The notes under the pieces: generated by a model
The model's database searches: none
What the model saw: the letters and a program-made list of their open reading frames with translations, nothing else
What the model was told of the DNA's origin: nothing
Shown here: piece after piece, positions 13,506 through 50,699 of the stretch
How positions within the stretch are numbered: the stretch's first letter is position 1
Layout of the letters: each line of letters starts with the position of its first letter
Assembly (NCBI RefSeq): GCF_022045235.1
Contig: NW_027266266.1
Location: 37,014,001 to 37,078,000, forward strand
DNA: 64,000 nt
Reading direction: 5' to 3'
From: Haliotis cracherodii
Taxonomy: Eukaryota
Program-made: the position numbers and the translations under genes

Positions 13506-14324
13506 GGGGTATTCTCAGGACGACGACCCCTCGAATTTTAGCATTGAGAGTAAATAAGTTTCTTAATGTTTCTTATGGCAATATATATTATTATTACAAT
13601 CCAATTATGATAATAATATATATCTACAATATTCTTTCTGTAATTACAGGTTGATGATGTATGGCTCCAGACAATTGCTGACATACCGAACGACCAACGC
13701 TGTGTCCAGCTCGGCGACTACGTCACCACAACCTGGGTTGAGACAGAGAAGGAGCCTTGGAACCATTTCAACAACGACGGCCATCGCATCAATAACCACC
13801 TGGAGGGATGGCATCGACGCTTAAAGAAAGTCATCGGCAAAGCCCATCCCAACATCTTTGAGCTAATAAGATTTCTAGGAGCTGAACAGCAGAAGACAGA
13901 GTGTAATCTGCTACAGTACCTGGCCGGCCAGCGTCTCCCACCAAAAAAGAAGAAGTTCTGTGATATACAACGCAGAATCGATCAACTGAAGACCAGACTG
14001 ATCCAGAATGAAGCCAGCGTAATTTTCTTTGCTGACTTAGTGTCTCATCTTCTCAAACTGTCTTAATTGCCCATGACTTTTACGTCATCTTGTACATATA
14101 CATTCTAATTATTTGTAAATATATCAATATTCCACCCTTATTGTCTTTCTTTCGTTCGTTTCAAATCCATTTCCACTTTTTTACTTGCTCCCAGTTGTTA
14201 AAATAACACTCGATACCCATTGTTTAACTAGATTGGCGGAATAAAATATTCGCAGGACGACGACCTCACTTTTTGCTAGTTTGTTTTCATACGACACAGG
14301 GGGCCGTCGTCCTGAGAATGAACC
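13506..14324 (+). mobile_element. Non-autonomous MULE (Mutator-like) element retaining the transposase C-terminal exon
   Basis: TIRs ..attctcaggacgacg / cgtcgtcctgagaat..; 9-bp TSD gtctcgcac / gtctcacac; after acceptor at 13649 an open frame DYVTTTWV..WNHF..HRINNHLEGWHRRLKK..HPNIFELI to stop ~14067. Confidence 0.88.
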
Positions 14325-14339
14325 GTCTCACACCACGAC

Positions 14340-14626
14340 ACTGTCACGCATGACGAAACATGACGTCAAGGTTCGGGCAAGGGCACTCCACGTGCACAAC
14401 ATTTCCTCTAAATTTACACCCGTCTCAACTGATAAAACACTGGACGCTGATTGGTTAACTCCCGAGCGTGTCAGGTTTTGATTGGTCCGCATTTGGTTGT
14501 CATAACTATATACAGTTTTTGAAACGCTTGATTAAGACCAAAGTTCAATCATAAAGTTGGCTGGTTGTTTGTCAGAAAAGTTGAAGTCCATCGTCACGTC
14601 AGATTAACTGCACCACAGCTATTAAG
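14340..14626 (+). promoter_or_regulatory. Candidate promoter and non-coding first exon of the plus-strand secreted-protein gene
   Basis: TGACGTCA (14361-14368), CACGTG, two ATTGG boxes (~14450, ~14483), TATA-like ctatatac (~14507), strong donor AAG|gtaagc after 14626; the next coding exon starts cag|ATG, which implies an upstream UTR exon. Confidence 0.5.
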
Positions 14627-14709
14627 GTAAGCGTTATAACCTGTGTTAATCTCAACAGGGATTGCCTGAAAGTCCTGGTGGGCAGGGTTGGGCTACCGGG
14701 TTGAAGAAT

Positions 14710-16105
14710 AATAAACGAAATGCGTGTATCTAACAATTTAATAAAGTGATAACTATTGACACAAACCGAGATTTAACGAGCGCTTTTGGATACCTAGAAA
14801 CATATTTAATTTGCCAAAACTTTCCACGAAGGGGCTGAAGGGTGAATAAGAGAAGTAAAGAAATTTGACAAGAGTAATGTGGATGTTTTCCAATGGGAAT
14901 TGATGTGACGGCCATTGGGAAGTCTGTAGACGTTGTGTTTTAGGGTTCAGGGAGTGGGATTCCAAAGCCTATTGACCACTAGAGTATTTTAGGGAACCAT
15001 CCGTGTAGGTTGGGTGCCATAAGCGCCTCCCCCCATGTTTGGTTTATGTATTTAGAGGTGGAAGCCCATCTTTGCTGGTGTTGTAGTTTACCTTTGTATT
15101 TATGATTGGAAATGGTAGTTGAGGTATAAAGAGCTGTGAGTGGGGATTACCACTTTGATGTGTCTAAGCCTCAGTTTTTCTTGTAGTGTAGCTAATACTT
15201 GGTTTATGGCATTTGCGTACTTGGATGTCTATATGCGGTTTTAGTTTTTTTAACATTATTGAGTAGTTTTTGCAATAGTTTATTTAGAACGGCGCCGGAC
15301 GAGTAATTAGAGAGAGTTGGTCCCTTCGGAGATCGAGGGGAGCTCTGCCGTTAGTGTCAGCAGGGCCCCCAGGGAGTGCCCGTGATTTAGTGTGTAGTTT
15401 AGTGTTTGGCTTAGCTTGTTTTGAAAGATTGTGGAAGACCTGTGATCCATACTGGAGTTTTGACTGATAAGTGTTTGGTAGATACTTAAGAGTTTTTATA
15501 TTTTGTTTTCAAGTTGAGCCACTTATTACTATCATTTGCTTTAATTGCCTTCAACATGAACTTTCCAGATGAGATACAGGTTGAAGATTAGCCCAAGGAA
15601 TCTGGCTTCTGATTATAATTGTATATTTTGACCATTTCGAGTTATGATTGGGCTTCTTGCTGTATTTTAGATATTTAGATAGAAGCCCCATTTGGCTGAC
15701 CAATTAACAACAGTATGTATAACAATTTGGAGTAGTTTAGTTGCTACTGAGCCCCGTCGTCTGTTTATGCCCTGAAGAGATAGATCAACCATCATTATAT
15801 TGAATAGAGTCGGGCTATGTGTGCTACCTTGAGGTGTATCGTTTTCGAGTTTGTAGGGATCGGATGCGGCGCCATGTTATGTCTGTCTTTTAGAAAGCTG
15901 TGGATTATGTTTGCTATCATATCAAGTTTTTGAATTATACCATAGTGCCAGACCATGTCAAATGCGTTAGAGAACCCAAGGAAGATTGCTATTGTATATT
16001 GATGTTTGGCAATGCCCGTAGCGGCATTCTGTTGGAGCCTGGAGAGGTAGTCTATGGACGAACGGCCTCCTCGGAAGCCCATTTGGTCCTGTGAGAAACT
16101 ATCGT
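14710..16105 (-). mobile_element. Decayed I-clade LINE fragment (RT, start of RNase H)
   Basis: GFRGGRSSIDYL...IFLGFSNAFDMVWHYGIIQKL (RT); YTDGS-like motif near 15000; many stops. Confidence 0.75.
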
Positions 16106-16112
16106 TTTGATT

Positions 16113-19100
16113 TAGTGAGTGAGTGAGTTAAAGTTTTACGTCCCATCGGCAATATTTCAGCCATATCGCGACGAGACAAAAGTATACATTAATCAGAAAT
16201 ATATTTAGAGTGTATAAAAAACTGTCATCGAAGGACCGCACAATAACCAGATTGTCACAAATCGCTCTTAAAACTTGTTTGAGTGAATGTAAAAGAATAA
16301 ACTATCAATTAACAGCACAATATGAAAAAGAATCTAGATCGCCAGCAACCAATGTTAGGCCACCTTACTAGGGACAGTGGGAACTTACAATACTTCTGCT
16401 TCATGCACGGTTCCCCACCAGCATAAATACCATTCTGGCGATTGTATGCAACTTTAGCCATCAAAGTGACAAGTATACTACTTTTGAAATTATGGCATGC
16501 ATAAAAATATTTTGAATGACACGGAACTTACATACCTTCTGAGGGGCAATACTTCAACACCAACTAAACCCCTCGTGTGTAGCACTACCAATGTGTTAAA
16601 TAACAGTATGAACATCAAAACTTATCAATTGATCAATTTCTTTTAAACACCCAAGAATTAAGCAAGAGTTGATATTGTCAAAAAGATCTTTCACGGTTGA
16701 AATTTTGATATAGTTATCCCTTGTGATGGAAAAATGTCCACAGTCAAGCAGGACATGCTTGACCTTGGTTCTTACATTATAAGGGATACAGAACAGTGAA
16801 TCATCTTTCAATAAATATTCATGTGTATATCTGCTGTGGCCAATGCGTCGTATAATGAACTCTTCAAATCTGGACTGACAACCCAAGGAGGTGTCACCAA
16901 CAGTTGGTTTTATTGAATGCAGTTTGCTTATATCTTCACTTCTGTTGCATCATATCTTTAATGTGACATCTAATTACAGGTATAATCACTGGATGGGATA
17001 AGAAGGGGTGTCACAGATTTGTTGGGCGCTGCCTTTACAGCAGCAACGGCTATTGTGTTAACAATGATTCCGACATGGCTTGGTAACCAACTAAAGACGA
17101 TGTCATATTGGCCAGTGGCAGAATCATTAAATAATTCAACAATTTCAAGTAAAAGAGGATGTTTACATGGCATATTGTTAATAGCCTGCAGGCACGAAAG
17201 AGAAAATATGATGAACTGTTTATGTTTCGATTGGTTCTTGATATATTCTAGAGCTGTTAAAATGACATTTACTTCTGCTGTGAATATGAAGCTAGTATCT
17301 GGTAATCGTGAAGATATTGTTCTGGATCCGATGACAGTGGCACAAGCAACCGTGCCACCATCCTCGCATCCATCGGTAGATAAAGATTTTTAAGTGTCAC
17401 ATGTGTTTCTTAATTGATTGTATTCTTGTGTTGGAAAATTAGTTGGGTTGTTTCTGATTTCTTAAGTTTCGTTAGTGTTAGGTCTACCCCTGACTTAACC
17501 ATTTGAGAAGGAGGCGATGACAAAAGATCGGTAGAATCTATATCTTGAAGTTTAATATTAGCAGTAGAAATGACAGATTTGATTCTTATTCCCAGTGGTG
17601 AAATAAGAGATGATTTTTGAGTGTAAATATATTCGTAGAAAGGATGAAATAGGCAATGAAAAGCTGGATTAGTCTGTTTAGAATATAATTTATTGATGTA
17701 CATGTATTGTAAGGATAATTTTACACGGCGTTGCCCAAGGGAAGGCTCATCCGCCTCCTAGTACAGACTATGTATAGGAGAAATTCGAAAGGCTCCAAGG
17801 CAAAACCCCAGGCTTGATGAAGGATAGTAGATAATGTTTAAAAATAATTTTACATGCTCTACCATAGATGATGGAACCGTAATCAAGTTTTGAACGGATC
17901 AGGGACCTGTACAAGTGCAAGAGGGCTGTCTGATCCCCTCCAATATTAGAATTAGAAACGACTTTCAACACATCGAGTGCCTTCAGTTATATGGTTGGTT
18001 GGTTGGTTGTTTTACGCCGCACTCAGCAATATTCCAGCCATATGACGGCGGTCTGTAAATAATCGAATCTGGACCAGACAATCCAGTGCTTAATATCATG
18101 AGCGTCGATCCGCGCAATTGGGATCGATGACATGCATCAACCAAGTCAGCAAGCCTGACCCCCCGATCCCGTTAGTCGCCTTTTACGACAAGCATAGTCA
18201 CCTTTTACAGCAAGCATGGGTTGCTGAAGACCTATTCTACCCCGGAATCTTCACGGGTCTTCAGTCATATGGCTTAAAGTTAAATGGCTATCAAAAATAA
18301 GTCCCAAGAACTTGAACTCCTTTACGACTTCGATATGGGTGCCATTCAAAAACAATAGTTCAGGGTCCTTATGTGGCTTATATGTAAACAGTTGGTTATT
18401 TATTTAGAAAATTTAAACCTGTCTTCAAGGGGCCACTTCTGACTTTTATTGAGACAGATTTGTCACAGCCATTTGTATGTATATTTATTATCACAACAAG
18501 AAACAAGAAAGGTGATCCATCAAGTGAATCACTTAAAACCTATTTATTTTAATTCTAAATAATGTGACAGACAAACTACTGGCCTGAGGGATACCCTGAC
18601 CCTGATTATAATGACGAGACAAAGTTGAATCCACTTGGACTTGAAATTGCTTGTCTGTTAAAAACTGTCATATAGAATGAGGTATACGACCACTCAAGCC
18701 TCAAACATGTAAATCCTTTTGAATGCCATGCTTCCAGGTGGTATTGTATGCTTTCTCAAGATCACACAAATTGATGCCATGTGTTGTTTATTTTCTGTAA
18801 CATTTTAAAGACAGATTTTCTTCGTACTAAATGATGAAAAGTACTAATATGTTTCAGGAAACCACATTGAATATCTGTAATAAGATTATTGGTTTCCAAA
18901 TACCAAACTAATGTCTTATTTACCATTCATTCCATGGTTTTGTAAACACAACTGGTTAAAGATACAGGGCGGATTCTTTAGAGAATGTACGATCCCGGAC
19001 AGGCTATGGTTTGGGGACTACAATGGCATTATGCCACGAAGGAAGACAATGTCCTGAAGTCCATATTTGGTCAAATATATCTAAAAGTGTCTCAAGACAT

Positions 19101-19970: not shown

Positions 19971-20084
19971 ACGTATCTTTACACATCTTAGATTTGGTCA
20001 TTTGATAAGCATTGCTTCATATTTAGGTATTTGAACTGAACAACATATCGTTTTACATGTGTTTGTATGTATGTTTTATCCCAG

Positions 20085-23000
20085 ATGGAGAGAGGTCTCG
20101 TGTTTGGTCTGATCGTCATGGTGGGTGTCCTCTCTGTCGAGGGTGAGTAAGTCCATCTTACAGTGGAACCCTGTTATTCCGGTTCTCATTCTTCTGGACA
20201 CCATCATCGTCAAAGATACAGTTATTACGTGTCTTGATGAGAAGTAACTTTTCTAAATGGTTCGAGATTTCAGTAAGTTGACTAAATATGGCAATTAGAA
20301 CTTGAAAAAGTATGTTTCCAATAAAAATTAACATTTTAATTGGTGTTTTTTGTCTTGTCTTTTTAGTGGGTTATGTTTGCGTGAAGAGTACAATATTTGC
20401 ATCTTTTACTTTTTATACTTTTGAGGTTCTGCCAGAAATTGTCCAGATTTCATTTTACTAACATCAAGTCAGTTTCTTTAATTTCATCACACATATGAAT
20501 ATCGAGGGGATATATCCCCTCGATATTCACACATGTGAATAAGTGTCTTGATGTTAGTAAAATGAAATCTGGAAAATTTCTGGCAGAACCTAAAAAGGAT
20601 AAAAAGTAAAAGATGCAAATATTGTACTCTTCACGCAAACATAAACCACTAAAAATATATAAAGTGGTTTATGTTTGCGTGAAGAGTACAATATTGGCAT
20701 CATGTCCACAACCACAACGCAGATTTTCGAACGCAGCTTTCCAAATCATGCATTGTTGAAAACGTGCAAAACGTGATTTTGAGACATTTGTCCAAATGCA
20801 CGTGCGTGATTGTGGCATAAATACCGACGTTGGACAGAGCAGGCAGTCAGTAAACAAAAAAACCACCAAGAATATGCCCAAACCTACACAGCGATCGGTA
20901 TGGCCAATATGTGGGCTACTCAACGTCAGATAGCCGGAACCTTCAACTGCTCCCAGACCACCATCAGCAAGTTGATAATCCGCTACCAGCAGACAGGACA
21001 GACAAGACTGGCCAAGATCGGGAAGACCGAGAGTGACAACACCGACCGAAGACCGCTACATCCGAAAGATTCACCTCCGAAACAGATGTGTGACGGCGAC
21101 GTCAACGGCGGCAACAGCACTAGGGAATGCCTTCAGCAGACGTACAGTCCTTCGGCGACTTCGGACGGCTGGTATACGAGCCTACCGATCTTTCCGTGGA
21201 ATGGCCTTGACCCGTCTACACACGTCAACGCAGACTGCAATGGGCACGAACTGTACGTCGGTGGCAGCGACGTGACTGGGCGAGAGTGCTCTTTACAGAT
21301 GAATGTCGGTCCTGTCTGTTCAGGAACGATGGCAGAGTTCGAGTTTTTCGACGAAGGGGAGAGCGACTGCGCCAAACTGCATCAGAGAAGTTCTCCTGTT
21401 TGGAGGTGGGGGCGTCATGGTATGGGGTGGCATTTGTGGCCAGATTACAACACGACTGGTTATCATCCGAAGAAACCTGAATGCTCAGCGATACAGGGAT
21501 GAAGTGTTGAGACCTGTTGTGGTGCCCTTTATTCAACATCAGCCAAGAGGATTAATTTTGCAACAAGACAACGTAAGGCCTCATACCGCCCGAATTGTTC
21601 AAGGAGATTGGAATTGATATAGGAGAGCACTGACCCTAGCCTGCGGTGTTCTATTGTATGATAAACGGCAACCACTCGTCGTTTATTTCTTAGATAATGA
21701 ACTACAGTCATCATATCAAAAGGGCAAGGTCATTTGCACACGTCCCTCGGATCACGTGTACTATTTTTTGTCCGTTGCAGCTTTAAACTATTTTTGATAT
21801 TATAAATGCATTTTTGGTTCGAGAACATGCATATTCTGTATTGTGTAGACATTGTTTATTTGTTTTTCGAATATCTTTTTTCAAGGTGCAGTTTTCATAG
21901 ACCTGTGTAATTCGACTTCTGGCGAGTCTGATGGAAGTCACAGTAACACCCAGGAATCTACGACTGTTGTTGATTATACGTTTGGGCCGTTCAATGAAAA
22001 CTCGTATGAGCTTGACTACTTTGGGAACGATCCGTTTGTAGTCCGAAGTCGAATTGTTCCAGGTGGACCGGATGTGCGACTGGGTGGCGCCACTGGTAAG
22101 TTTAGAACTTCAAAATTGTGTGAGGTGTGTTGGGGTGTGTCAGGTGGAATTGGGTGGTGTTGCGTGTGTGGGTTGTGTGAGGTGGGTTGGGCACTGTCAG
22201 GTGGAATTGGGTGGTGTTGCGTGTGTAGGTTGTGTGAGGTGGGTTGGGCTGTGTCAGGTGGAGTTGGGTGGTGTTGCGTGTGTAGGTTGTGTGAGGTGGG
22301 GTGGGGTGCTGATGTTGCGTGTGTAGGTTGTGTGAGGTGGGTTGGGCTGTGTCAGGTGGAGTTGGGTGGTGTTGCGTGTGTAGGTTGTGTGAGGTGGGGT
22401 GGGGTGCTGATGTTGCGTGTGTAGGTTGTGTGAGGTGGGTTGGGGTGTGTCAGGTGGAATTGGGTGGTGTTGCGTGTGTAGGTTGTGTGAGGTTGGTTGG
22501 GGTGTTTCAGGTGGAGTTGGGTGGTGTTGCGTGTGTAGGTTGTGTGAGGTGGGGTGGGGTGCTGATGTTGCGTGTGTAGGTTGTGTGAGGTGGGTTGGGG
22601 TGTGTCAGGTGGAATTGGGTGGTGTTGCGTGTGTAGGTTGTGTGAGGTTGGTTGGGGTGTTTCAGGTGGAGTTGGGTGGTGTTGCGTGTGTAGGTTGTGT
22701 GAGGTGGGTTGGGGTGTTTCAGGTGGAATTGGGTGGTGTCGCGTGTGTAGGTTGTGTGAGGTGGGTTGGGCTGTGTCAGGTGGAATTTGGTGGTGTCGCG
22801 TGTGTAGGTTGTGTGAGGTGGGTTGGGCTGTGTCAGGTGGAATTTGGTGGTGTTGCGTGTGTAGGTTGTGTGAGGTGGGTTGGGCTGTGTCAGGTGGAAT
22901 TTGGTGGTGTTGCGTGTGTAGGTTGTGTGAGGTGGGTTAGGGTGTGTCAGGTGGAGTTTGGTGGTGTTGCGTGTGTAGGTTGTGTGAGGTGGGTTAGGGT

Positions 23001-24390
23001 GTGTCAGGTGGAATTTGGTGGTGTTGCGTGTGTAGGTTGTGTGAGGTGGGGTGGGGTGCTGATGTTGCGTGTGTAAGTTGTGTGAGGTGGGTTGGGTTGT
23101 ATCAGGTGGAATTTGGTGGTGTCGCGTGTGTAGGTTGTGTGAGGTGGGGTGGGGTGCTGATGTTGCGTGTGTAGGTTGTGTGAGGTGGGGTGGGGTGCTG
23201 ATGTTGCGTGTGTAGGTTGTGTGAGGTGGGTTGGGCTCTGTCAGGTGGAATTGGGTGGTGTTGCGTGTGTAGGTTGTGTGAGGTGGGTTGGGGTGTGTCA
23301 GGTGGAGTTGGGTGGTGTTGCGTGTGTAGGTTGTGTGAGGTTGGTTGGGGTGCTGATGTTGAGTTCGTTGCAATATATCATTGTCTCTTGGGTCTTACCT
23401 TCAATGATATTAAAAATTAATGAGTTAACTTTATACTGTAGCTTCCAACAACAATAATTTGTGACTTGTCGCCATCTTTATCAACAGTCCAGCAATATCA
23501 CGACGGGGGACACTAGAAACGACACATTGTATTCATATCGGCGCAACGAGCAAATAGTTTAACCACGAACCTACCTAACCGCACCGCACTGTTTTGAAAC
23601 CAAATAAATTTTGTCTCCTTTGTATATAGCGAGTGCATGACATGTAACAGGTCTGTACGTTTTTGTTGACAGATGCACCATTAACAGCGTCAGCTGTTGG
23701 AACTGGCATTGTTTACTTTGAGCCAACGAATGAAGTGTATGTCGCCATTACATTTGACGACGCCTCACTGAATGGGGTTTATGCCTTCAAAAGGACCGGC
23801 TTTCCGGATATCAGGCTGGTCTTCCCGTATGATGGCCCCACTGGACAGCTCTACCTATCTGGAGAGTATGTAGATAACGTACATTAGGAAATGATCCTTG
23901 ATTCCGAGAACTGATTCTCACAATCACTTTTATCTTTGAATGTATGTTGAGAAAGATGAGGTTTCCATGGCAACTAGTTTGACATGTGCTTTCTTATCGT
24001 TTCCGCATGATGTCAGCCTCACACAAGACCTCACATGGAGCCGTTGTGGGACATTTATATACTATTTACGACAGGCAGGAAGGCGCCTCAGATATTTGCT
24101 CTTGGTTCGACCTTCTACTGAAAATGTACAAATGAACGTTATAGAACATGGGTAGATATATATCTAGCGTCCTCATTTAAATAAGCATAACTGCCAATTT
24201 GTTTTTCTCAGGCCTCCGTCCTAAGCGTCTACAAACCCAATTCAAGTACTCTTTTCTTCTTGCAGTTTCCTGTATATGGTTGATGGTCAGAAAATTCTCA
24301 GGATCGCTGATGGCGACAGTTCATGGACTCTAGTAACTGCATGGCCTTTAGTTCCCATTGGGTTTGCAGTTCAAGATGATGGTTAGTATG

Positions 24391-24427
<37 letters not shown>

Positions 24428-26397
24428 AAACAAACTGCACTACCAAGGTGTATAAGTATATTCAGCTCTGCAGCCGAATGACAGTCCCATCTGATTGGAG
24501 ATTATTATACCACCTCACATTTTCCAATATTACATTGGTCGGACAATACGCAGCTGAGTCTGAACCTGAGGAAAGCTACAACCAGAACTAACATCCCCAC
24601 AACCAGAACATTGTGACCACTTATTTCTAGTTGTATTTCTTGAGTAAATCACCGAGTTCATTCAATAATGGCTGCCCTATGTGTCCATGCTACAGGTACA
24701 ATGGCGTTTTGCGAGTCATCGGGTGCCCTGTGGCTGTTCAATCCAGGAACATTTTTCTTCAGACAGTTGAAACAGCCAAATCCTGTGTCCTGTGCATCCC
24801 TCGAACTGCACAACGGCCTTATCTACGTCGCAAACGAGGGCTCGTCGTAAGTTTGTTTTTTGTTTAACGCCGCAATATTCCAGACGGCGGTCTGTTAATA
24901 AACGAGTCTGGACCAGACATTCCAGTGATTGACATCATGAGCATCGATCCACGTCATTGGGATACGATGACATGCATCAACCAAGTCAGCGAGCCTTACC
25001 ACCCATGCCCGAATTGATTCAATTTGTATTTCTTATTGGCAAGTTAGGGGGCACGGGTGGCCCAGTCGTCTAAGGCGCCGCGATTTGCAGTGCAGAGTTG
25101 CGTCCCTTGGGCACGCCAGAAACCTATGATTGTGGGTTGGAATCCCGGTTCGCCCCGATTATGTTTCTAGGTTTGTCAGCACCATACCCGTGCTCGTGGG
25201 TTTCACCGAAGTGGTAAACGTCTAAGACCTGCATCACTTCGGACTTTCCTCCCACATTAAGCTGACACGCCGTGATATGACTGGAATAATGTCAAAAGCG
25301 GCGTTAAACCCAACTCACTCACTATTGGCAAGTTAAACATTTGAAACGGAAGCGACTTTCCATGGCCGGTCTACTTGTTTTGGCCGGTCAAAGTTCTCGA
25401 AAGATTGTCCTGACGTGACTTGGAATGGGATGTTCTTTGTTTCGCGAGAACTAAAATGTGATTTTAATGAGATTGAAATATTACCTTGCCTCAATCATTT
25501 GTTTTTCAAAACCTGGACTATGTAGCTGTATTAACTTTTTTTTGTTTCAGAGTGATTGAGGCTTTCAACTCTTCTGCTCTTGGAACTGATGGCGCCATGC
25601 CAGTAACTTTCAACTCGTCAACAACATGTCCATTACTTGTGATAGACCCTCGGTTCTGGTATGAAGTGTTTTAATATGGGTAGTAAAAAGTTTGGCTTAT
25701 AATTATAATGAACCCATTACTAATCTTTCGACAATTTGATTTATATTTAATCAAGAATAGGTTTGGTTTTGCAATTACAATCAATATCTCCCAAATCATA
25801 ATTTATTGTTTCTGCTGTGACGTTCAATTACACATCAAAACAGCTCACATGGTGTACAATTGATACCAATATCGTATATTGTCAATACTTCACCGTTAGT
25901 ATACACCATGTGCCTCTATCATCGGTGAATACGTTCGGCCGCCATGCGATCTAATAGTCGCGCGTCAGATAATCAAATGTCCCCTTTGTCAAACAATGGA
26001 GTATAGTAGGGATTAAAAAGGTCAACGCCCATATCCAAATGGGACTGTCCCAAACTGGATATATTAATTTGAATAAATTTGGTATCGGCGGGAAGTTTTT
26101 GATTATTAATAGATCTATGTATGGCAACATCAATGTTTGAGTAAAATATTTTCATACCAACAGCGATATTTTTAGTTAATACTGGATTAATGCAAGGGGT
26201 CTTTTTATCGCATCTGTTATTTCGTTTTTATTGAGGTAATACCGTCAGTATGACAACCATACGCTAATCTATAGATATACAGATACTGCTGTTGGTTAGC
26301 AAACAATTTCAAATAGTAATAGATTAAGATTGTGCGTGTGTGCCTGCGTGCGTGCTTGTGCGTTTTTAACTTCAAATCTGCATTCGTTTTTTTCAGA
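20085..26397 (+). CDS. Secreted beta-propeller-like protein, copy 1 (~278 aa, short N-terminus)
   Basis: Phase-compatible GT-AG exons 20085-20142 (signal MERGLVFGLIVMVGVLSVEG), 21886-22095, 23673-23865, 24266-24381, 24696-24846, 25551-25658; stop probably split TG|A into exon starting 26397; AATAAA 26459-26464. Blade-like strands VYFEPTNEVYVA, LYLSGDFLYMVD, PIGFAVQDDGTMAF, LELHNGLIYVANEGSSVIEAFN. Fold is inferred. Confidence 0.75.
20362..20690. repeat. Inverted repeat with perfect 32-bp palindromic centre and Tc1-like termini
   Basis: Arms ~20362-20468 and ~20546-20652; centre gaatatcgaggggatatatcccctcgatattc (20497-20528); third copy of the end motif at 20663-20690. Confidence 0.9.
20700..21616 (+). 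mobile_element. Decayed, 3'-truncated Tc1 transposon
   Basis: GRPRVTTPTEDRYI, LFTDECR, GGGGVMVWGGI, LNAQRYRDEVL, QQDNVRPHTA; sequence stops before the third catalytic residue, at the duplication breakpoint. Confidence 0.9.
22117..23362. repeat. Intronic GT-rich minisatellite (57-bp unit with 41-bp variant)
   Basis: caggtggaat at 22141, 22198...; shorter counterpart at ~40250-40560. Confidence 0.95.
24852..25323. mobile_element. Family B fragment (minus) followed by full-length family A SINE (plus, 25046-25323)
   Basis: Family A copy flanked by TSD tattggcaagtta. Confidence 0.9.
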
Positions 26398-39215: not shown

Positions 39216-42200
39216 CTACTAACCATCATCTTGAACTGCAAACCCAATGGGAACTAAAGGCCACGCAGTTACTAGACTCCATGAACTGTCGCCATCAGCG
39301 ATCCTGAGGATTATCTGACCATCAACCATATACAGGAAACTGCAAGAAGAAAAGAGTACTTGAATTGGGTTTGTAGACGCTTAGGACGGAGGCCTGAGAA
39401 AAACAAATTGGCAGTTATGCTTATTTAAATGAGGACGCTAGGTATTCTATAACGTTCATTTGTACATTTACAGTAGAAGGTCGAACCAAGAGCAAATATC
39501 TGAGGCTCCTTCCTGCCTGTCGTAAATAGTATATAAATGTCCCACCACGGCTCCGTGTGAGGTCTTGTGTGAGGCTGACATCATGCGGAAACGATAAGAA
39601 AGCACATGTCAAACTAGTTGCCATGGAAACACACATTCAAAGATAAAAGTGATTGTGAGAATCAGTTCTTGGATTCAAGGATAATTTCCTAATGTACGTT
39701 ATCTACATACCCTCCAGATAGGTAGAGCTGTCCAGTGGTACCACCATACGGGAAGACCAGCCTGATATCCGGAAAGCCGGTCCTGTTGAAGGCATAAACC
39801 CCATTCAGTGAGGCGTTGGTAAATGTAATGGCGACATACACTTCATCCGTTGGCTCAAAGTAAGCAATGCCAGTTCCAACAGCTGACGCTGTTAATGGCG
39901 CATCTGTCAACAAAAACGTACAGACCTGTTACATGTCATGCACTCGCTATATACAAAGGAGACAAAATTTATTTGGTTTCAAAACAGCGTCGGTGCGGTT
40001 AAGTAGGTTCCTGGTTAAACTATTTACTCCTCGTGATATTGCTAGACTGTTGATAAAGATGGCGACAAGTCACACTACACTCAGGAAGAAGGAGAACATT
40101 ATTGTTGTTGGAAGCTACAGTATAAAGTTAACTCATTACTTATTCAATATCATTGAAGGTAGGACCCAGGAGACAATGATATATTGCAACGAACTGTCGT
40201 ATATAAATATACGACACCTACAAGCATCCCAACATTCAACAACACTCAACATCAGCACCCCACCCCATCTTACATAACTTACACACGCAACACCACCCAA
40301 ATCCACCCGACACAGCCCAAACCACCTCACACAACCTACACACGCAACACCACCCAATTCCACCTGACACACCCCAACCCACCTCACACAACCTTCACAC
40401 GGAACACCACCAAACTCCACCTGACACACCCCAACCCACCTTACACAACCTACACACGCAACACCACCCAATTCCACCTGACACAGCCCAACCCACCTTA
40501 CCACACCACACCACCCTACACGTCCCGTCACCACCCTAAACCACCTACACACCACCACACCCCAGTCTACACATTATTACGCAATCAATGGTTAGATGAA
40601 TTGGGTTTTAAGGTCGCGATCAAGATCATTGCACTTTTCCAGCGACGTACATGCATGTATGTTTTGGGGTGCTTGTACTAGTGCTAACCACTGAAATACA
40701 TCGACGCAGTTTATCATAAATACCCCACTCAGTCTTCTGACGCCTAGCCGACCAGTATTGGTTTTATTTCCTTAAAGTTAGGCAGGGCCACACGTATTAT
40801 CTTTTAATGTCTTATGATATGATGTGACCAGGGATCAAACGACAAACCTTCCGCTCTCCGGACAGGAGCTATAACCACTAAATCTAGGAGGCGAACGACA
40901 ATCATTGTGATTATGGACTGAATAGAGACATGTTCACACATTGATATCAGAGGCTGAAAAAATTGGAAGTTGTTCTAAACTTACCAGTGGCGCCACCCAG
41001 TCGAACATCCGGCCCACCGGGAACAATTCGACATCCGACTACAAACGGATCGTTCCCAAAATAGTCAAGCTCATACGAGCTTTCATTGAACGGCCCAAAC
41101 GTATAATCAACAATAGTCGTAGATTCCTGGGTGTTATTTTGACTTCCACCAGACTCGACGACAGTCGAATTACACAGGTCTATCAACACTGCACCTTGAA
41201 AAAAGAAATTGGAAAAACAAATAAACAATGTGTACACAATATAGAATTTGCATGTTCTCGAACCAAAAATGCATTTATCATATAAAAAAAGTACACGTGA
41301 TCCGAGGGACGTGTGCAAATGACCTTGTCCTTTGATATGCTGACTGTAGTTCATTATCTAAGAAATAAACGACGAGTGGTTGCTGTTTATCGTACAATAA
41401 AACACTGCAGACTAGGGTCAGTGCTTTCCTATACTCAGGGTAAAGCCTACACATTGCCTCTCCGTACTCAAGTGTGAGTGAGTGAGTGAGTGAGTGAGTA
41501 TGGTTTTACGCCGCTTTAGCAATATTCCAGCAATATCACGGCGGGGGACACCACAAATGGGCTTCACACATTGTACCCGTCGGGAATCGAACCCGGGTCT
41601 TCGGCGTGACGAGCGAACGCTTTAACCACTAGGCTACCCGACCGCCCCCCGTACTCAAGATGATCAGGTCCTGCCAATTATATTTAGATGGGAGCACAGA
41701 TGCCCGAGAGGTTTACGTACGGCGACGCAATTTACTCTTTTCGATTCCCGACATTGGTACAATGTGTGAAGCCCCTTTGTGGTGTCCCTCCGCCGTGATA
41801 TGGCTGGAATATTGCGGGGTAAAAGCTCACTCACTCACTCCAGCTGATAGTCATGGATTTGGTCAAATCAACATTTGGTGAGTGGTTTTATCTTGTCTTT
41901 CTGACTATATGGTAGAAAGTGTTATTGACCTGAAAATACATACCTCCTAAGGGGCATCCTGTTGTGGCGTCGAGGGATTGGGCAGAGGCGAGTAAGGCAT
42001 TCAAGCCATTTCGTAGGACTGCAATCTTCGTTTGAAAGCATTCCACATCTTGAATTGTTTCGGTTCCATTCAGCGCTACATCATCTGCAAGAATATTGAT
42101 AATTATGAGTGAGTGAGTCTGGACCCGACAAACCTGCGTTTGATATCATGATCAGCGATCCCCGACGTCGGATTACGTTGACGTGCAATAAACAAAATGT

Positions 42201-45200: not shown

Positions 45201-48200
45201 AATTAATTTAGAATGAGTTGAATCATGTGTAATGATGCTTGTAGACGAACCCTTATGTATTTATTAAAAGAAAAACATGAGTTTTGAGCAAAGGAAAACA
45301 TTCTGGGTTTCCAGAATTAAAATGGGACGTGTTATAGGTATATAGGCAATTAATATTTTTTTATGAACACATTCAGATGCAATTTCATGTTTAGGTTTAT
45401 GATCAATTTACATGAACTAAAACAAAACAAATATATTTTATGTGGCAGAAGGGATTGTTGCAAGTATATTTGTAATGATGGGGAGTGGCAGCAAATGATG
45501 GAAGAGCTGAGAAAACGTCGAGTGCTGTCGGCGGCAGCTGTGAGTGGAAATTAGAGTTACTTGCCCTAGTTGTTGACAACAACGTCTACCTGTATTTCCG
45601 TTTCTCACTGAGTGAGTGAGTATGGTTTTACGCCGCTTTTAGAAACATTCCAACAAAATCACGACGGGGGACAACAGAAATGGGCTTCACACATTGTACC
45701 CATGTCGGGAATCGAACCCGGGTTTCGACGTGAAGAGCGAACGCTTTAACCACTAGGCTACCCGACCGCCCCTCTGTTTCTCAGCTTTCACCGGTCAGCA
45801 TCCGCGTGTTTAATTACAGGACGGAGTCTGACGCGGTGCTCGTGGCTCCTACCAGAAGCTGAATTCTACCGTTCTGCGCATGCGCATGCCTTGCTCAAAT
45901 TTGTCGTGCACGCGATTGTGCGGATTGTTTTCAGCACGAACTTGTTCTAACACATCGCAAATGCTGCAAGCTGGCACACGCATTTCTCATTGAACAACGC
46001 AAAGATAACGGGGATAATTTTAGTAAAATGAATAGGAAAAGGGCAAGACTTAGGTAAGGCTAATGTATAGAAAAAGGATATTACTTTCGGAGTCAATTAT
46101 AACCAAAACATACGCAAACTAATATCAAACTGCCACTGAATAACTTGCCGGCTTTCACGACTTATCTTTGTAGAAGGTGGCCACATGGTATATAATGACA
46201 GAGAACTTATACATATATTACTTTGTGATATTACCTACAAATGAGAAAACTACGTTTTTTTATATTATTTAGTTTCTTCCGCTCTCGTTTTGATGTGACC
46301 TGAGTACATTTACTCGGGATTCCCCTTCCTCAAGTGTACACGACGCTTACATAACATCGTATACATTGATATGTGTAATATTATAATGTTGTCTACTATG
46401 TTCTGTTATTGTAAACAGATTCTTTGCCACACTCGACCCGTGAAGATCCGGGGTAGAATAGGTCTTCAGATCAGCAACCCATGCTTACCGTAAAAGGCGA
46501 TTATGCTTGTCGTAAGGGGCGACTAACGGGATCGGGTGATCAGGCTCGCAGACTTGGTTGATGCATGTTCGGCAAGGGACTTTTATAGTCAGTTAACGCC
46601 CATGCCCAGGAAAATGGAATAATACACAAACATTAATCTGACTGCGGCGTATTGGACAATAATATACAGTCCCCGGTGCTCAGGTCTGTTGTATATATGT
46701 TCTATATTATTGATAGTGAGGAACACGCTACTCTACAGAGCTAAGAAACTTTGTGGATATATAGAGGATATTTCATGTGTCGAGTGAAATATCATGTTTC
46801 TCTCACCGAGTGACGGGGGGAAAGGAGATATTTTCACGAGTGGCGTAGCCGTCATGAAATATCCTATTTATTATTTACTTTTGGTGTAGTTGTCTGCAGG
46901 AAGATTAAAATATTTCATTACAAATGTAAAACCTTCAGGCGTAAATTCTCCCTACATAACACACATGGACGGTTTACGACAAAAAATGTAGTTCCGTCTT
47001 TGCTAAATCTTAAAAAATATAAACAAAAGTAACCAAATATATTTGATATCACTAACATTCTTTAGTATACATTTGGATATGATTATATACAAAATCAACT
47101 TCATCAAAAAATAAATTTCAAATCAATGAGACGGTTGTTCGAAGCGAAAGAATACACGCAATTCAAGTAACAAAATGGCGCTTTGCGAAACGTAAAGTAT
47201 CGACTGACAAATCAGAACAGAAATTCACAGTTTAATACAAATCATTTTCAACACAATATCAAACGGTAAGAATCGGTATTAACTACATAAATGACCATCT
47301 GTCATTATAAGACTTGTCAACGTTAAACTGACGTAAATCAACAGTTTGTGTACGAGCTGTCTCGTGTAGGCCAACATAGTTCCGTCAACGTGTTATGTTC
47401 ACTGCAGTGAAATATCAAGTGTTATGTTCACTGCAATGAAAATATCACTTTTCTCAACTTCAGAAAACTCAGTCTTTCACACTTAAGTATATAATAAATG
47501 TTAAGCGCCAAGACATCTGAAAACTGTAACTGTTTTAAATGGTTTAATAAGTACAAATGTATGAGTTTATTGTACGTTTTGATTTTCATATCATTTCAAG
47601 AGACACAAGCTCACATAAAGCTGTAGTTATCATGTCACTGTTTTTTTAATTTTTTTATTTAACATATTTTATTGTCCCAAAAGACAAAGGGATTGGACTG
47701 TTTTCTTTACAAATATATTATGTATTCATCAATGACAATTGAAATGAACATTCAATTCCCCATACAAGCAAGTGAGTGAGATAGTTTTACAACACAATCA
47801 ACCAAAGACCAACGCTTTCCTGTTTGATGACACACAGTCTACCTGGTCGAACTGTTGTTCATCCGATGGTCGCTATTAATAGATAAGGTGTGACTTACAA
47901 GCCACATTCGTGACTATGGCCCAATGTACAACGTGTATAGCAGATACAAGTATTTAATTTTGTGGCCCATACCACCCCTATTATGCCTCAAAGTGAGACT
48001 GACCAATCAGAGAGCAGAACTACTGATCCCACATGAGCCCGTATACCGTCAGTAAAAGTCCAAGGGGGCTGTTACTGACCTAATATGAGACCGTATACCG
48101 TCAGTAACAGCCATTTTGGATTTTCCAACACCCACCTCACATATTTCACATAAAAAATCTGGAACAGAAATTCGTTATTCGACACTGTTTAAGTGTTTAA

Positions 48201-50276
48201 TATCATTAATTTTGATGTGCAAGGACGTAATATTTTTTGGGATCACGTTTGTAACTTTAATAAAGATTATATAAAGTTACAATTATCAACAAGGTTTGGC
48301 CTCTGAGGTTTGAAGAGTAGTCTCCCTTTGACCCTTAACGTCGTAGGTTGTAAGTGTTAAGTTTTCATTTTGACATGACATGTGCGACAAAGATACCAAA
48401 TATTTCGTTATGGTGTCTTTAGTTGCCGTATACGGTGTCATATTAGGTTAGCAGAAAAATATGACACCGTATACGTCAACTAAAGACACCATAACTTATA
48501 CTCTCGCATCAAAACTACACGCAAAGCAGTTAAATGCAACTTTTTGTACCCAAAATGTGACTCGGAAAGTGCTTCAACAATATCTGAACAAACACTTAAC
48601 ATCCGACAGAGTAAAGAACAAAGAATTAAATCTTGAGCAAATCGTATTTTAATATTACAAACCGCAAGCAACGTAGACACGAATCATGGAATGTTTACTG
48701 TTATAACATACACCGTCACTGAGGAAATATTTCATATCATTTAACATGAAGAGCTAAAACTTCAGTATGAATATGTTTTCTTCCTTGAAGTCGAAGAATG
48801 CTTGATTCTGATTGGTTAAAAAGAGGTTTCCATTTTCCTTTAGGTATTAAGCCTTTTCACACACAAAAAAACGTGCGTATGAATACATCCATTGGCTACA
48901 TATCGTCCATAAGAAAATGGCTGCATTCGGTAGGGTGGTGTGTTGCCACCGTGCAATCATTAACAGAATAGACGCCGGGCCTCTAATAGACGGTGGGTGA
49001 ATAGCTCACGCGAAATTAATAGATGACCGGGCGTCTAATAGAGGAAACACGCAACATTTGATACGTGTTTTGGGCGACTACTCTGGCTGAATGATGAAAT
49101 GACAACACTTAACGCAGGCGCCTCCGGTAGAAAAAATAGCCAAAAACACGAATATAGGTCACGGAGAAACGAACTGAGCATAAATTCTTAAAAACATTGA
49201 CATTTTTCAAATTTTCCTGAAAATAATCGGCCTAGCAAGAACAAATTCGCAAATTTAAAAACAAAATTAATTGAAATAACGAGAAATTAATCGACATTAC
49301 GAGATAGAACTCGAAATTTCGATAACTGTTTATTGATATTCGAAATTCCTGGAAAAGTTGAAACATGAATACCATATGAAAATTTTGAATTTAACAACCA
49401 GAAAAGTACTCGAAATTTCGATTAAAAATGAAATTATGCTACCAAGGTGGCAACATCAGGCCTTACTAGTAAAGCGCTATTTCAATTGAGGTACATGTTG
49501 ATAGAGCGTTTATATGTAGCTCCTATTAGAAACAGACAATTATGTAATGTTTGGGCGATCAATATCAGCACGGGTAGTAAGAAATTAGAGTTACGCGCAG
49601 CTACCTTTCCCGTGGCAATGACTTCCAAACAAGGTTTTACATTTTCAAACCCCGATCGCCAAGGGTTTACATCTCCAAGCATAACCCACAAGAAGTTTTT
49701 TATCTACCACGTAAAAACATGGGGAAACGGACAATTATTGTATTGGAGTCTGTATTGAACAGAACCAGAGCGAAGTAAATTTCGCACGTACAAAAGCTAT
49801 TTCATTTATAAACATAGAAACCAATTACTATTTTATGAAATCATTGATATGCGATTCATAATTTAAGTTTATGATCAAGTTCCATGAACCAAAAAACATA
49901 TTTTATTGCATGTTCAAAATATTAATGAATAAAGTTTCCAAAACATTACTTCCGAAAATCGTCCTTCTGTGCACAAGGCCTCAGCGGCCGAATTGTTACA
50001 GGAGAAAAAAATATGTTTGTAAGGAACTTTGTCAGCGGAGGTACAGGTTAACAAACTGCCTTATAAAACCTTTAAAGAAACGATTCAATGAAATGGGTGG
50101 TCAGGCTTGATGATTTGGTGTATAGCGTATCATCTCTGCCCGACGGCCTGCATAGATGCTCAAAATATCAATCAATGGATTGTCTGTTACAGACTCGGTT
50201 ATTTAAGGCCGCCGTCACGTAGCCGGAATACTGTTCAGTGGGGTGTTAAAGAAACACACAAACACAAACACAAAAA

Positions 50277-50317
<41 letters not shown>

Positions 50318-50506
50318 ACGTATATTATATTCCTTACCAAAACAGGGACACTGATCGCCGACGACGTTCGATATGCTGCTAACTTCGGATTGAACGTTTT
50401 CGAGAACTTCAAGGAAAGCTGCAAATTTGTCTTCTAGGGTTTCTGATGCTGACGGAACGATGATGGCTAGTAAGAGACACGGGAACAATTTGGAGACGAA
50501 CATCAT
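37244..50506 (-). CDS. Secreted coiled-coil + beta-propeller-like protein, copy 2 (~362 aa)
   Basis: Phase-compatible GT-AG exons 50506-50338 (signal + amphipathic helix + CPC), 42084-41944 (DDVALNGTETIQDVECFQTKIAVLRNGLNALLASAQSLDATTGCPLG), 41194-40985, 39903-39711, 39339-39224, 38909-38759, 38112-38005, split stop into exon at 37244; polyA signal 37177-37182; no in-frame stops. Confidence 0.78.
40590..40895 (-). mobile_element. Old family D (Meta-like) SINE, absent from the left arm
   Basis: Degenerate match to 60034-60402. Confidence 0.65.
41473..41648 (-). mobile_element. Young tRNA-Asp-like SINE family C with TSD
   Basis: TSD ccgtactcaag on both sides; intact A/B boxes; (ctca)n tail. 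Confidence 0.92.
42190..45300. repeat. ~3.1-kb degenerate fold-back (long inverted arms)
   Basis: ~42190-43620 is colinear reverse complement of ~44040-45300 (e.g. 42450/45170, 42830/44620, 43100/44530, 43440/44210). Confidence 0.85.
45609..45772 (-). mobile_element. Family C SINE
   Basis: Same consensus as 41473. Confidence 0.9.
46435..46568 (+). mobile_element. Family B SINE 5' half
   Basis: gacccgtgaagatccggggtagaataggtcttcag... Confidence 0.85.
46757..47497. mobile_element. Possible non-autonomous Crypton-like element
   Basis: Start tatatagaggatatttcatg..., internal ttttcacgagtggcgtagcc, end ..tatataataaa; resembles invertebrate non-autonomous Crypton-type repeats from memory, not verified. 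Confidence 0.4.
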
Positions 50507-50699
50507 CTTGATTCTTGAAACTGCTACTGACAAGAAACAGACAGTTACCCGAATTTATACTGATGATCGATAACCTTCGTTAGATTTCTCGGTCGCTCAA
50601 TGGATTTCGTGAAACAGACGTTTCAAGTATTTTTTTTCATTTACTCTGTTCTTTTTTTTTGATGGATGTCATGTACATGATTCAATAACTGTGGCTTAA

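What the first reader, a model, noticed from the sequence alone, without database searches (positions are those of the whole stretch)
14340..50530. Inverted paralog pair with swapped N-termini: a long coiled-coil form and a short chimeric form of an unannotated secreted beta-propeller protein
Seen: both copies share five phase-compatible propeller exons plus a terminal exon, and homology stops abruptly at 21617/41433, upstream of the first shared exon. Copy 2 (minus) is preceded by two phase-1 exons encoding a signal peptide and two amphipathic helices flanked by Cys (CPC, C, C). Copy 1 (plus) is preceded by a different, unrelated phase-1 exon encoding only a signal peptide, with its own candidate promoter at ~14.5 kb. 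Both models are stop-free. Inference: exon shuffling created a new gene by placing the propeller under another gene's promoter and signal exon. This would yield an oligomerising form and a monomeric form of the same domain, an architecture recalling coiled-coil + globular-head secreted recognition or matrix proteins. I recognise no named family.
Basis: partly seen in the sequence, partly recalled or inferred. Interest (0 to 1): 0.8.

Follow-up and report, generated by a model that had tools for sequence, protein, structure and literature searches.

The report
Abalone propeller gene pair, long and short
Two neighbouring, oppositely oriented copies of an abalone-only gene for a secreted six-bladed propeller protein are real; one has a coiled-coil stalk and the other only a new signal exon, but use of that exon in black abalone is not shown.

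Summary
The window is Haliotis cracherodii chromosome DNA. It carries an inverted repeat, 21618-28547 (+) against 41433-34451 (-). Both arms contain the same five coding exons.

- **Copy 2:** it equals RefSeq XP_071092740.1 (367 aa): signal peptide, two heptad helices with conserved Cys (QCPC, ECF, CP), then a six-bladed beta-propeller. The AF2 model matches YWTD/NHL propellers at Z about 21. No Pfam family matches.
- **Family range:** it was detected only in abalones.
- **Copy 1:** The pair therefore predates that species split and is not a haplotype artefact.
- **Gene conversion:** it homogenises the 3' exons within each species.

Three caveats apply.

- In black abalone a Tc1-like repeat sits in the intron before exon C. 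The RefSeq model starts inside that repeat and has no signal peptide. The only copy-1 RNA contig reads straight through the 21886 acceptor.
- No donor gene for the signal exon was found.
- A third, orphan copy of exon A abuts the assembly gap.

The idea of an oligomeric versus a monomeric form remains inference. The genes are annotated, as "uncharacterized protein".

The parts
14443..14626 (+). Promoter-like block (two ATTGG/CCAAT boxes and a TATATA) plus exon 1 of the short gene; the donor is AAG|GTAAGC at 14626/14627. In this species the codon that is ATG in H. rufescens reads ATT, so exon 1 is probably non-coding here.
   Evidence: Sequence. 14603-14626 translates INCTTAIK against MNCTTAIK in P0024. 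The block is conserved in the local duplicate.
20085..20142 (+). Exon 2' of the short gene: MERGLVFGLIVMVGVLSVE(G), a signal-peptide-like exon in phase 1, with acceptor cccAG| and donor |GTGAGT.
   Evidence: It is 17/19 identical to P0024 and unique in the genome. RNA depth was zero in the two RNA runs laid.
20600..21617 (+). High-copy Tc1/mariner-like fragment in the intron between exon 2' and exon C. It ends exactly where homology to copy 2 begins.
   Evidence: DNA word depth is 1400-4300 against about 30 in the flanks. The ORF 21303-21617 is 57% identical to the DDE_3 ORF at 30270-30791.
20909..21397 (+). First coding exon of the RefSeq model of copy 1 (XP_071092737.1). It is derived from the transposon, carries no signal peptide, and is spliced to an acceptor at 21848/21849.
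   Evidence: tblastn of P0026: residues 1-163 match 20909-21397 at 100% and residues 164-245 match 21849-22094. Best Kyte-Doolittle 12-residue mean is 0.49.
21618..28547 (+). Left arm of the inverted duplication: 268 nt of the old intron, exons C-G, the 3' flank and the 30-nt minisatellite.
21886..22095 (+). Copy 1 exon C (first propeller strand, a loop, and blade 1).
   Evidence: RNA contig record 11 covers 21767-22094 and then jumps to 23672.
23673..23865 (+). Copy 1 exon D.
   Evidence: RNA contig record 11 covers 23672-23865 with 0 differences.
24266..24381 (+). Copy 1 exon E.
   Evidence: RNA contig record 11 covers 24266-24380.
24696..24846 (+). Copy 1 exon F.
   Evidence: RNA contig record 12 covers 24739-24846 and joins to 25551.
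25551..25674 (+). Copy 1 exon G with the stop codon (WYEVF*). A possible alternative donor lies after ...DPRF (TG|GTATGA, exon ending at 25658), which would explain why some RefSeq models end at DPRF.
31617..31844 (-). Inverted 83%-identical duplicate of the promoter and exon 1 block of the short gene, with the donor site kept. It is the only other copy in the genome.
34042..34322 (+). Orphan third copy of exon A (coding 34148-34316, MMFVSKMFPC...DQCPCF) with 106 nt upstream. It is 99.3% identical to 50612-50332 and runs into the gap 6 nt after its donor.
34323..34450 (.). Assembly gap. It lies in the spacer between the two genes and is not crossed by any exon of either model.
34451..41433 (-). 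Right arm of the inverted duplication. It starts in the 30-nt minisatellite at the gap edge.
37989..41194 (-). Copy 2 exons C (41194-40985), D (39903-39711), E (39339-39224), F (38909-38759) and G (38112-37989).
   Evidence: They are identical to P0023.
41944..42084 (-). Copy 2 exon B: the second heptad helix, with ECF and GCP cysteines.
50338..50506 (-). Copy 2 exon A: signal peptide, first heptad helix and the QCPC motif.
   Evidence: Homology to the paralog's upstream region continues to 50827.

Best explanation
**What it is.** This is a real inverted segmental duplication, shared by at least two abalone species, inside an abalone-restricted gene family.

**The ancestral (long) gene.** Its exons A-G encode a secreted glycoprotein. 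It has a signal peptide, two heptad-repeat helices bracketed by conserved cysteines (QCPC, ECF, CP), and a C-terminal six-bladed beta-propeller made entirely from exons C-G.

**The short gene.** A partial copy began 268 nt upstream of exon C and ran through the 3' minisatellite. It was placed in inverted orientation about 6 kb away. It sits downstream of a two-exon 5' unit: a CCAAT/TATA promoter with a short exon 1, then a 58-nt signal-like exon. In H. rufescens this is annotated as a 286-aa stalk-less protein.

**Evolution after the duplication.** Gene conversion between the arms keeps the 3' exons identical within each species. The 5' propeller exons diverge, and the short forms of both species share the loss of two N-glycosylation sequons.

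**Inferred mechanism.** The stalk makes disulfide-linked oligomers that present several propeller heads for multivalent extracellular binding. The short form would be a single head.

**Black abalone specifically.** The signal exon and all splice sites are intact. However, a Tc1-like fragment lies in the intron. The transcript evidence at hand starts in or after that fragment. Production of the secreted short protein in this species is therefore unproven.
For: **Species and family.**
- Protein names, and contig lengths equal to C3 and C51, identify the species.
- Only 8 representatives reach E<=1e-10 among 1.84 billion, and all eight are Haliotis proteins.

**Ancestral exon order.**
- The paralog 1 Mb away has the same A-G exon order. 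Its DNA is colinear with copy 2 over exons A-G, into exon A's upstream region.
- Copy 2 equals P0023 exactly.

**Fold.**
- The AF2 model has pLDDT 74-93 over about residues 130-340.
- Foldseek gives E about 1e-8 to six-bladed propellers.
- VIA gives Z 21.6, rmsd 3.1-3.5 over 237-245 residues, spanning 103-365, to LRP6/LDLR/megalin. NHL, TolB and Pizza6 score Z about 19.

**Stalk.** Strong hydrophobic residues fill 8/9 and 7/9 of the heptad a/d positions, against 3/20 elsewhere. The pattern and the cysteines are conserved across the family.

**Short form.**
- It is conserved across species: P0024 against exon 2' is 17/19, and exon 1 is 7/8.
- Both short forms lack the NNT and NRT sequons.

**Concerted evolution.** In exon G the two copies differ by 0 residues in black abalone and 1 in H. 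rufescens, and by 10-11 of 35 between species.

**Copy 1 is a separate, transcribed locus.**
- A spliced RNA contig is specific to copy 1.
- DNA contigs from two other studies carry copy-1-specific sequence at about half the depth of the shared part.
Against: - No read or contig joins 20142 to 21886. The copy-1 RNA contig is colinear through the acceptor back to 21767, and RNA depth over exon 2' is zero.
- RefSeq's black-abalone model of copy 1 (P0026) uses a transposon-derived first exon and has no signal peptide.
- dN/dS between the copies is 0.67 overall, from 10 synonymous and 21 nonsynonymous changes. It is about 1.4 in exon D. This does not show constraint.
- Gene conversion could keep the 3' exons open without selection on copy 1.
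- The H. rufescens short model is a computational RefSeq prediction.
- Oligomerisation, secretion and ligand binding are untested.
- The stalk has low pLDDT (33-50) in the monomer model.
Confidence: 0.75

Rival explanations
1. In black abalone the short copy is a decaying, transposon-driven transcript rather than a gene for a secreted protein. The Tc1-like insertion took over the 5' end, and the reading frame of exons E-G survives only because gene conversion from copy 2 keeps repairing it.
For: - The RefSeq model P0026 starts at 20909 inside the repeat and uses a non-canonical-position acceptor at 21849.
- The RNA contig is colinear from 21767 through 21886. In that reading there is no in-frame ATG before exon E.
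- RNA depth on exon 2' is zero.
- dN/dS is about 0.6-1.4 in exons C and D.
- Copy 1 has lost Cys at propeller position 55 and four sequons.
Against: - All 283 codons of the exon 2' + C-G model are open, and every splice site is intact.
- Exon 2' and exon 1 are conserved with H. rufescens.
- Exons C and D, which are not homogenised, carry no stops or frameshifts.
- Only two small RNA-type contig sets of unknown tissue were laid, and contigs drop rare forms.
Confidence: 0.35
2. The pair is an assembly artefact. The two arms are haplotypes or collapsed or misjoined copies of one locus, brought together across the gap.
For: - A gap lies between the arms.
- A 2-kb stretch is 99-100% identical between them.
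- An orphan exon A sits at the contig end, and a minisatellite sits at the other edge of the gap.
- The copy-1 type of exon D was not seen in the DNA contigs of two other individuals.
Against: - H. rufescens has separate short and long loci, LOC124110404 and LOC124110405, on one contig, with the same distinct 5' exons.
- The arms have different unique flanks.
- Copy-1-specific sequence (20001-20525 and 21733-21996) is present in DNA contigs of two other studies, at roughly half the depth of the shared exons. This is as expected for two copies.
- A copy-1-specific spliced RNA exists.
- Short-specific residues are shared across species.
Confidence: 0.05
3. There are really three copies. The orphan exon A at 34042-34322 is the start of a second long gene on the + strand, whose body is hidden in the gap. 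That gene would form a near-perfect palindrome with copy 2.
For: - Exon A' with 106 nt of upstream sequence is 99.3% identical to copy 2's exon A. The contig stops 6 nt into its intron.
- Near-perfect palindromes centred on minisatellites are hard to assemble (general knowledge).
Against: - Exon B and its flanking intron occur only once in the assembly.
- DNA word depth over the shared exons E-G is about 2x the unique flank in two individuals, not 3x. Word depth of contigs is a rough measure.
Confidence: 0.15

Closest known systems
Olfactomedin-domain proteins (Olfm1/noelin, myocilin)
   Same: Both are secreted and share the same layout: signal peptide, cysteine-containing N-terminal region, coiled coil, then a C-terminal beta-propeller head. 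Olfm1 forms disulfide-linked tetramers that present propellers at the tips, and it has isoforms with different N-termini (abstracts of PMC4463452 and PMC6857237, seen).
   Different: There is no match to the OLF domain or to any Pfam family. By general knowledge the OLF propeller is five-bladed, whereas this model matches six-bladed propellers. Here the two forms are separate paralogous genes, not isoforms.
YWTD (LDL-receptor class B) six-bladed propellers of LRP6, LDLR, megalin, LRP4 and nidogen
   Same: They give the best structural matches: Z 20-21.6, rmsd 3.1-3.6 over about 240 residues, covering the whole domain 103-365. They are also extracellular.
   Different: Sequence identity is 9-13% and there is no Pfam Ldl_recept_b hit. 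No EGF module follows the propeller, because the protein ends a few residues after the last strand.
NHL-repeat and TolB-type six-bladed propellers (PknD sensor, Mei-P26 NHL, designed Pizza6)
   Same: They share the fold at Z about 19. The exon D profile weakly hits one NHL-repeat protein in six stretches (P0014, E 6.8e-5).
   Different: No family member reaches even E=1 against the Pfam NHL model.
Chimeric young genes made by partial duplication plus recruited 5' exons, and palindrome arms homogenised by gene conversion (general knowledge; no paper read here)
   Same: The duplication breaks inside an intron. Unrelated upstream exons supply the promoter and the start codon. The inverted arms evolve in concert.
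   Different: The source of the recruited exons was not found. Use of the recruited exon is unproven in this species.

Membership tests
Abalone-restricted 'uncharacterized protein' family (RefSeq LOC124110405-like) | Significant sequence match to other members | tested here: met
   The exon D profile gives E 1.6e-30 to 9e-20 against Haliotis proteins. P0001 against P0023 is 87% identical over 100% of the length.
Abalone-restricted 'uncharacterized protein' family (RefSeq LOC124110405-like) | Exon order A-B-C-D-E-F-G with a signal peptide, QCPC, ECF and CP cysteines, and the propeller | tested here: met
   Copy 2 and the paralog at C3:38.04 Mb share all seven exons. The cysteines are conserved in alignment A2. 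Copy 1 has only C-G.
Olfactomedin family (Pfam PF02191) | Sequence match to the OLF domain | tested here: not met
   No Pfam hit at E<=1 for the single exons or for five full-length members.
Olfactomedin family (Pfam PF02191) | Five-bladed propeller | tested here: not met
   The model has about 24-25 strands. All top matches are six-bladed propellers.
Olfactomedin family (Pfam PF02191) | Signal peptide, N-terminal cysteines and a coiled coil before the propeller | tested here: inconclusive
   The heptad pattern and cysteines are present and the N-terminus is hydrophobic. However, no coiled-coil or signal-peptide predictor was available, and pLDDT is low in this region.
YWTD / LDL-receptor class B propeller (Pfam PF00058) | Sequence match to the class B repeat | tested here: not met
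   No hit at E<=1.
YWTD / LDL-receptor class B propeller (Pfam PF00058) | Six-bladed propeller fold | tested here: met
   Z 21.6, rmsd 3.1-3.5, 237-245 residues aligned.
YWTD / LDL-receptor class B propeller (Pfam PF00058) | C-terminal EGF module packed on the propeller | tested here: not met
   P0023 ends at residue 367, just after the last strand (354-358).
NHL repeat (Pfam PF01436) | Sequence match to the NHL repeat | tested here: not met
   No hit in family members. There is only a weak profile hit to one NHL protein.
Chimeric gene by partial duplication with recruited 5' exons | The duplicate is truncated inside an intron and preceded by exons unrelated to the parent | tested here: met
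   Homology ends at 21617/41433. Exon 2' has no similarity to the long forms.
Chimeric gene by partial duplication with recruited 5' exons | A transcript joining the recruited exon to the duplicated exons | tested here: inconclusive
   Not seen in black abalone, where the contig reads through 21886. It is present in the H. rufescens RefSeq model P0024, whose evidence I could not inspect.
Chimeric gene by partial duplication with recruited 5' exons | An identifiable donor of the recruited exons | tested here: not met
   Exon 2' is unique in the genome. The exon 1 block has only a local inverted 233-nt copy.

The most novel reading that the evidence does not exclude
The stalk-less paralog is a secreted single-head antagonist or modulator of the oligomeric long form. 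Gene conversion keeps the 3' half of both propellers identical, while the 5' blades and their glycans diverge. This would be a lineage-specific, self-tuning recognition pair in abalone, for example in immunity, fertilisation or shell matrix.
Probability: 0.1. Interest if true: 0.65.

Novelty: new member of a known kind. Interest (0 to 1): 0.4.

Why it matters
**What it documents.** This is a taxonomically restricted secreted protein family that no Pfam model covers. I found it only in Haliotis. It has a fold assignment: a six-bladed propeller on a cysteine-bracketed heptad stalk.

**Why the locus is useful.** Three processes are visible in one place:
- partial duplication,
- recruitment of a new promoter and signal exon,
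- segment-wise gene conversion.

For abalone biology, black abalone being critically endangered, it offers a candidate extracellular recognition or matrix family to test.

**Practical point for annotation.** The RefSeq model of the short copy in black abalone has a transposon-derived N-terminus. That differs from the H. rufescens ortholog and needs transcript evidence.

**Limits.** The kind of event is well known and the function is unknown, so the general interest is moderate.

Tried and rejected
- **Pfam.** Scans of each exon alone and of full-length family members found no family.
- **PDB by sequence profile.** Only weak hits appeared: an S-layer YVTN protein at E 0.002, plus Kelch/WD and GCN4-like coils at E>0.04.
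- **Olfactomedin membership.** This was my first guess from the architecture. I rejected it on Pfam and on blade number.
- **Donor gene for the signal exon.** A whole-genome DNA search and a sensitive tblastn in the window found nothing.
- **Missing third gene body.** Exon B and its intron are single-copy apart from a SINE-like repeat.
- **Literature.** There were no hits for the LOC or XP identifiers and no paper on the family.
- **Reads.** Copy 2's junctions A>B>C were therefore not checked with reads. They rest on RefSeq P0023 and on paralog conservation.
- **Joined models.** Exons were searched one by one, and full-length work used database proteins returned by the tools.
- **Bacterial promoter scan.** The scan on 14300-14700 is irrelevant for an animal gene.

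Full report
**What the window is.** The window is G000:C3:37014001-37078000 of a 1.18-Gb, 80-contig assembly. Family proteins returned by the searches are named Haliotis cracherodii. They sit on contigs of 49,011,830 and 242,103 bases, the lengths of C3 and C51. The genome is therefore black abalone. I never joined the window's exons into a spliced sequence for a search. Exons were searched singly, and all full-length work used database proteins that the tools returned.

**Checking the observation: the repeat.**
- An inverted repeat joins 21618-28547 (+) to 41433-34451 (-).
- Identity is uneven: 83% in the first 268 nt, about 92% around exon C, 94% in exon D, 96.5% in exon E, and 99-100% over 24160-26137.
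- Each arm ends in a 30-nt minisatellite.
- The intron between exons C and D carries a 57-nt minisatellite, with about 21 units in copy 1 and about 4 in copy 2.

**Checking the observation: the exons.**
- Five exons are shared and open in both arms. In copy 1 they are C 21886-22095, D 23673-23865, E 24266-24381, F 24696-24846 and G 25551-25674.
- Copy 2 adds exon B (42084-41944) and exon A (50506-50338).
- Copy 1 is preceded by the 58-nt exon 20085-20142 (MERGLVFGLIVMVGVLSVE) and by an exon ending at 14626. Both have good splice sites.

**The gap.**
- The N run 34323-34450 lies in the spacer between the genes, and no exon of either model crosses it.
- Its left edge is 6 nt into the intron that follows a third, + strand copy of exon A (34042-34322, 99.3% identical to 50612-50332).
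- Its right edge is copy 2's 3' minisatellite.
- The two sides are not continuous in any gene sense, and the true spacer length is unknown.
- Exon A has no further copies in the assembly beyond diverged paralogs. Exon B with its intron is single-copy.

**What the protein is.**
- Single exons and full-length relatives match no Pfam family.
- A profile of exon D from seven paralogs was scored against 1.84 billion representatives. It found only 8 proteins at E<=1e-10.
- All eight are 'uncharacterized protein' entries of H. rufescens, H. asinina, H. rubra and H. cracherodii.
- The genome holds further paralogs: one 1 Mb away on C3, two on C78, a 3.8-kb-period tandem array on C51, and others on C80 and C18.
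- The paralog 1 Mb away has all seven exons A-G and is colinear with copy 2 into the region upstream of exon A. The long architecture is therefore ancestral.

**Fold.**
- An AF2 model of P0023, built with 13 family sequences, is confident over about residues 130-340 (pLDDT 74-93) and is all-beta there.
- Foldseek matches six-bladed propellers at E about 1e-8.
- VIA-align gives Z 21.6, rmsd 3.1-3.5 over 237-245 residues spanning 103-365, to the YWTD propellers of LRP6, LDLR, megalin, LRP4 and nidogen. NHL, TolB and Pizza6 follow at about Z 19.
- The propeller begins with the first residues of exon C, so both long and short forms contain a complete propeller.

**Stalk.**
- Residues 24-51 and 67-92 are modelled as helices with low confidence.
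- Strong hydrophobic residues occupy 8/9 and 7/9 of the a/d heptad positions, against 3/20 elsewhere.
- The heptad pattern and the QCPC, ECF and CP cysteines are conserved across the family.
- The PDB profile search gives only insignificant GCN4-type hits there.
- A coiled-coil or helical-hairpin stalk with intermolecular disulfides is a reasonable inference. It has not been shown.

**The short form is old and shared.**
- H. rufescens has a 286-aa protein (P0024, LOC124110404) on the same 35.9-Mb contig as the long form (P0001, LOC124110405), with consecutive gene numbers.
- Its N-terminus is MNCTTAIK-MERCLVFGLIVMAGVLSVE-GAVFIDLC.
- Window 14603-14626 reads INCTTAIK, and exon 2' matches 17/19.
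- In black abalone the upstream ATG is ATT, so translation would start at MERGLVFG.
- Both species' short forms lack the NNT and NRT sequons that both long forms keep. This is a shared derived state.

**Concerted evolution.**
- By exon, paralogs group by species at the 3' end. In exon G the two copies differ by 0 residues in black abalone and 1 in H. rufescens, against 10-11 of 35 between species. Exon F is identical between the two black-abalone copies.
- Exon C is not homogenised in black abalone (10 differences between the copies).
- That is segment-wise gene conversion between the inverted arms.
- Exon D of copy 2 is closer to the paralog 1 Mb away (6 differences) than that paralog is to its own H. 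rufescens ortholog (8 differences). This suggests ectopic conversion as well.
- dN/dS between the two copies is 0.67, from 10 synonymous and 21 nonsynonymous changes. That is too few changes to separate relaxed from diversifying evolution.

**Is it an artefact?**
- DNA contigs from two other studies contain copy-1-specific sequence (20001-20525, and 21733-21996 with 1-3 differences). Its word depth is 21-29, while the shared exons D-G lie at 37-60. This fits two copies.
- The copy-1 type of exon D was not seen in those two individuals. Their contigs carry copy 2's six letters there. That looks like polymorphic conversion.
- Together with the H. rufescens loci and a copy-1-specific RNA, a haplotype artefact is unlikely.
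- The orphan exon A' at the contig end leaves open a hidden third copy. Depth near 2x, and the single exon B, argue against it.

**Expression of copy 1 in black abalone.**
- One RNA-type run (X15) gives a 680-nt contig laid as 21767-22094 | 23672-23865 | 24266-24380. It has 0 differences in exon D.
- A second contig joins 24846 to 25551.
- Copy 1 is therefore transcribed and spliced C>D>E. The F>G junction is also seen, but exons F and G are identical in the two copies, so that contig may come from either.
- The first contig runs colinearly through the proposed acceptor 21886 for 119 nt upstream.
- RNA depth on 20001-20600 is zero, and no joint 20142>21886 appears.
- In the read-through form a stop lies at 21846-21848, and there is no in-frame ATG before exon E.

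**RefSeq's model of copy 1.**
- RefSeq's own model here (P0026, XP_071092737.1, 434 aa) takes its first 163 residues from 20909-21397. It splices to an acceptor at 21849 and has no hydrophobic N-terminus.
- The stretch 20600-21617 is a high-copy repeat (depth 1400-4300 against about 30).
- That repeat is related to the DDE_3 transposase ORF at 30270-30791.
- Three different 5' structures are now on the table. The signal-exon form is the only one without direct support in this species.
- Contigs drop rare forms, and the tissues are unknown, so this does not show absence.

**Origin of the recruited exons.**
- Exon 2' with its flanks is unique in the genome, and tblastn in the window finds nothing similar.
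- The promoter and exon 1 block (14443-14673) has one other copy: an inverted, 83%-identical 233-nt duplicate at 31617-31844 in the spacer.
- That duplicate keeps the two ATTGG boxes, the TATA-like element and the donor site.
- No independent donor gene is identified. 'Another gene's promoter and signal exon' therefore remains unproven.

**Comparison with known systems.**
- In architecture the long form works like olfactomedins: signal peptide, cysteines, coiled coil and propeller. Olfm1 is a disulfide-linked tetramer (PMC4463452 and PMC6857237, abstracts).
- It is not a member of that family. There is no OLF match, and the propeller has six blades.
- The fold is closest to YWTD, NHL and TolB propellers, but without sequence membership and without a following EGF module.
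- The evolutionary event, a partial duplication with recruited 5' exons and conversion between inverted arms, is a known kind (general knowledge).

**Verdict.**
- This is a new, uncharacterised member of known kinds, of moderate interest.
- The function is inferred, not shown: a multivalent extracellular binder and its single-head paralog.

Noticed in passing
window 31617-31844 (-): An inverted, 83%-identical duplicate of the short gene's promoter and exon 1 block lies in the spacer between the arms. It keeps the CCAAT-type boxes, the TATA-like element and the splice donor. It is the only other copy in the genome. On its strand it points into the antisense of copy 1.
   Followed up: partly
window 34042-34322 (+): An orphan near-identical copy of exon A, with 106 nt upstream, ends at the assembly gap. 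It may be a partial duplicate or the start of an unassembled third gene.
   Followed up: partly
G000:C3:38045940-38049176 (L003) and window 39711-39903: Exon D of copy 2 is about 90% identical in protein to the paralog 1 Mb away, while the other exons are 36-55% identical. That paralog is closer to copy 2 in exon D than to its own H. rufescens ortholog. This suggests ectopic gene conversion.
   Followed up: partly
G000:C51:181789-200340 (L007-L011): A tandem array of family paralogs with a 3828-bp period sits on a 242-kb unplaced contig. Four of the five exon D copies score identically.
   Followed up: no
window 22116-23352 vs 40256-40501: The 57-nt G/T-rich minisatellite in the intron between exons C and D has about 21 units in copy 1 but only about 4 in copy 2.
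   Followed up: no
window 24801-25400: A repeat in the intron between exons F and G has word depth in the millions in DNA runs. It is also very abundant in the RNA-type runs, with many internal joints.
   Followed up: no
window 41473-41650: A SINE-like element of about 170 nt lies in copy 2's intron. The genome holds at least 40 copies at 94-98% identity, so it appears young. It sits just beyond the homology break.
   Followed up: no
window 23695-23844: DNA contigs of two other individuals carry copy 2's six variant letters in exon D, at double depth, and none carry the reference copy-1 type. The RNA contig carries the copy-1 type exactly. The extent of gene conversion therefore seems polymorphic.
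   Followed up: partly
window 5116-6105 (+): A 329-aa open frame with no Pfam match.
   Followed up: no
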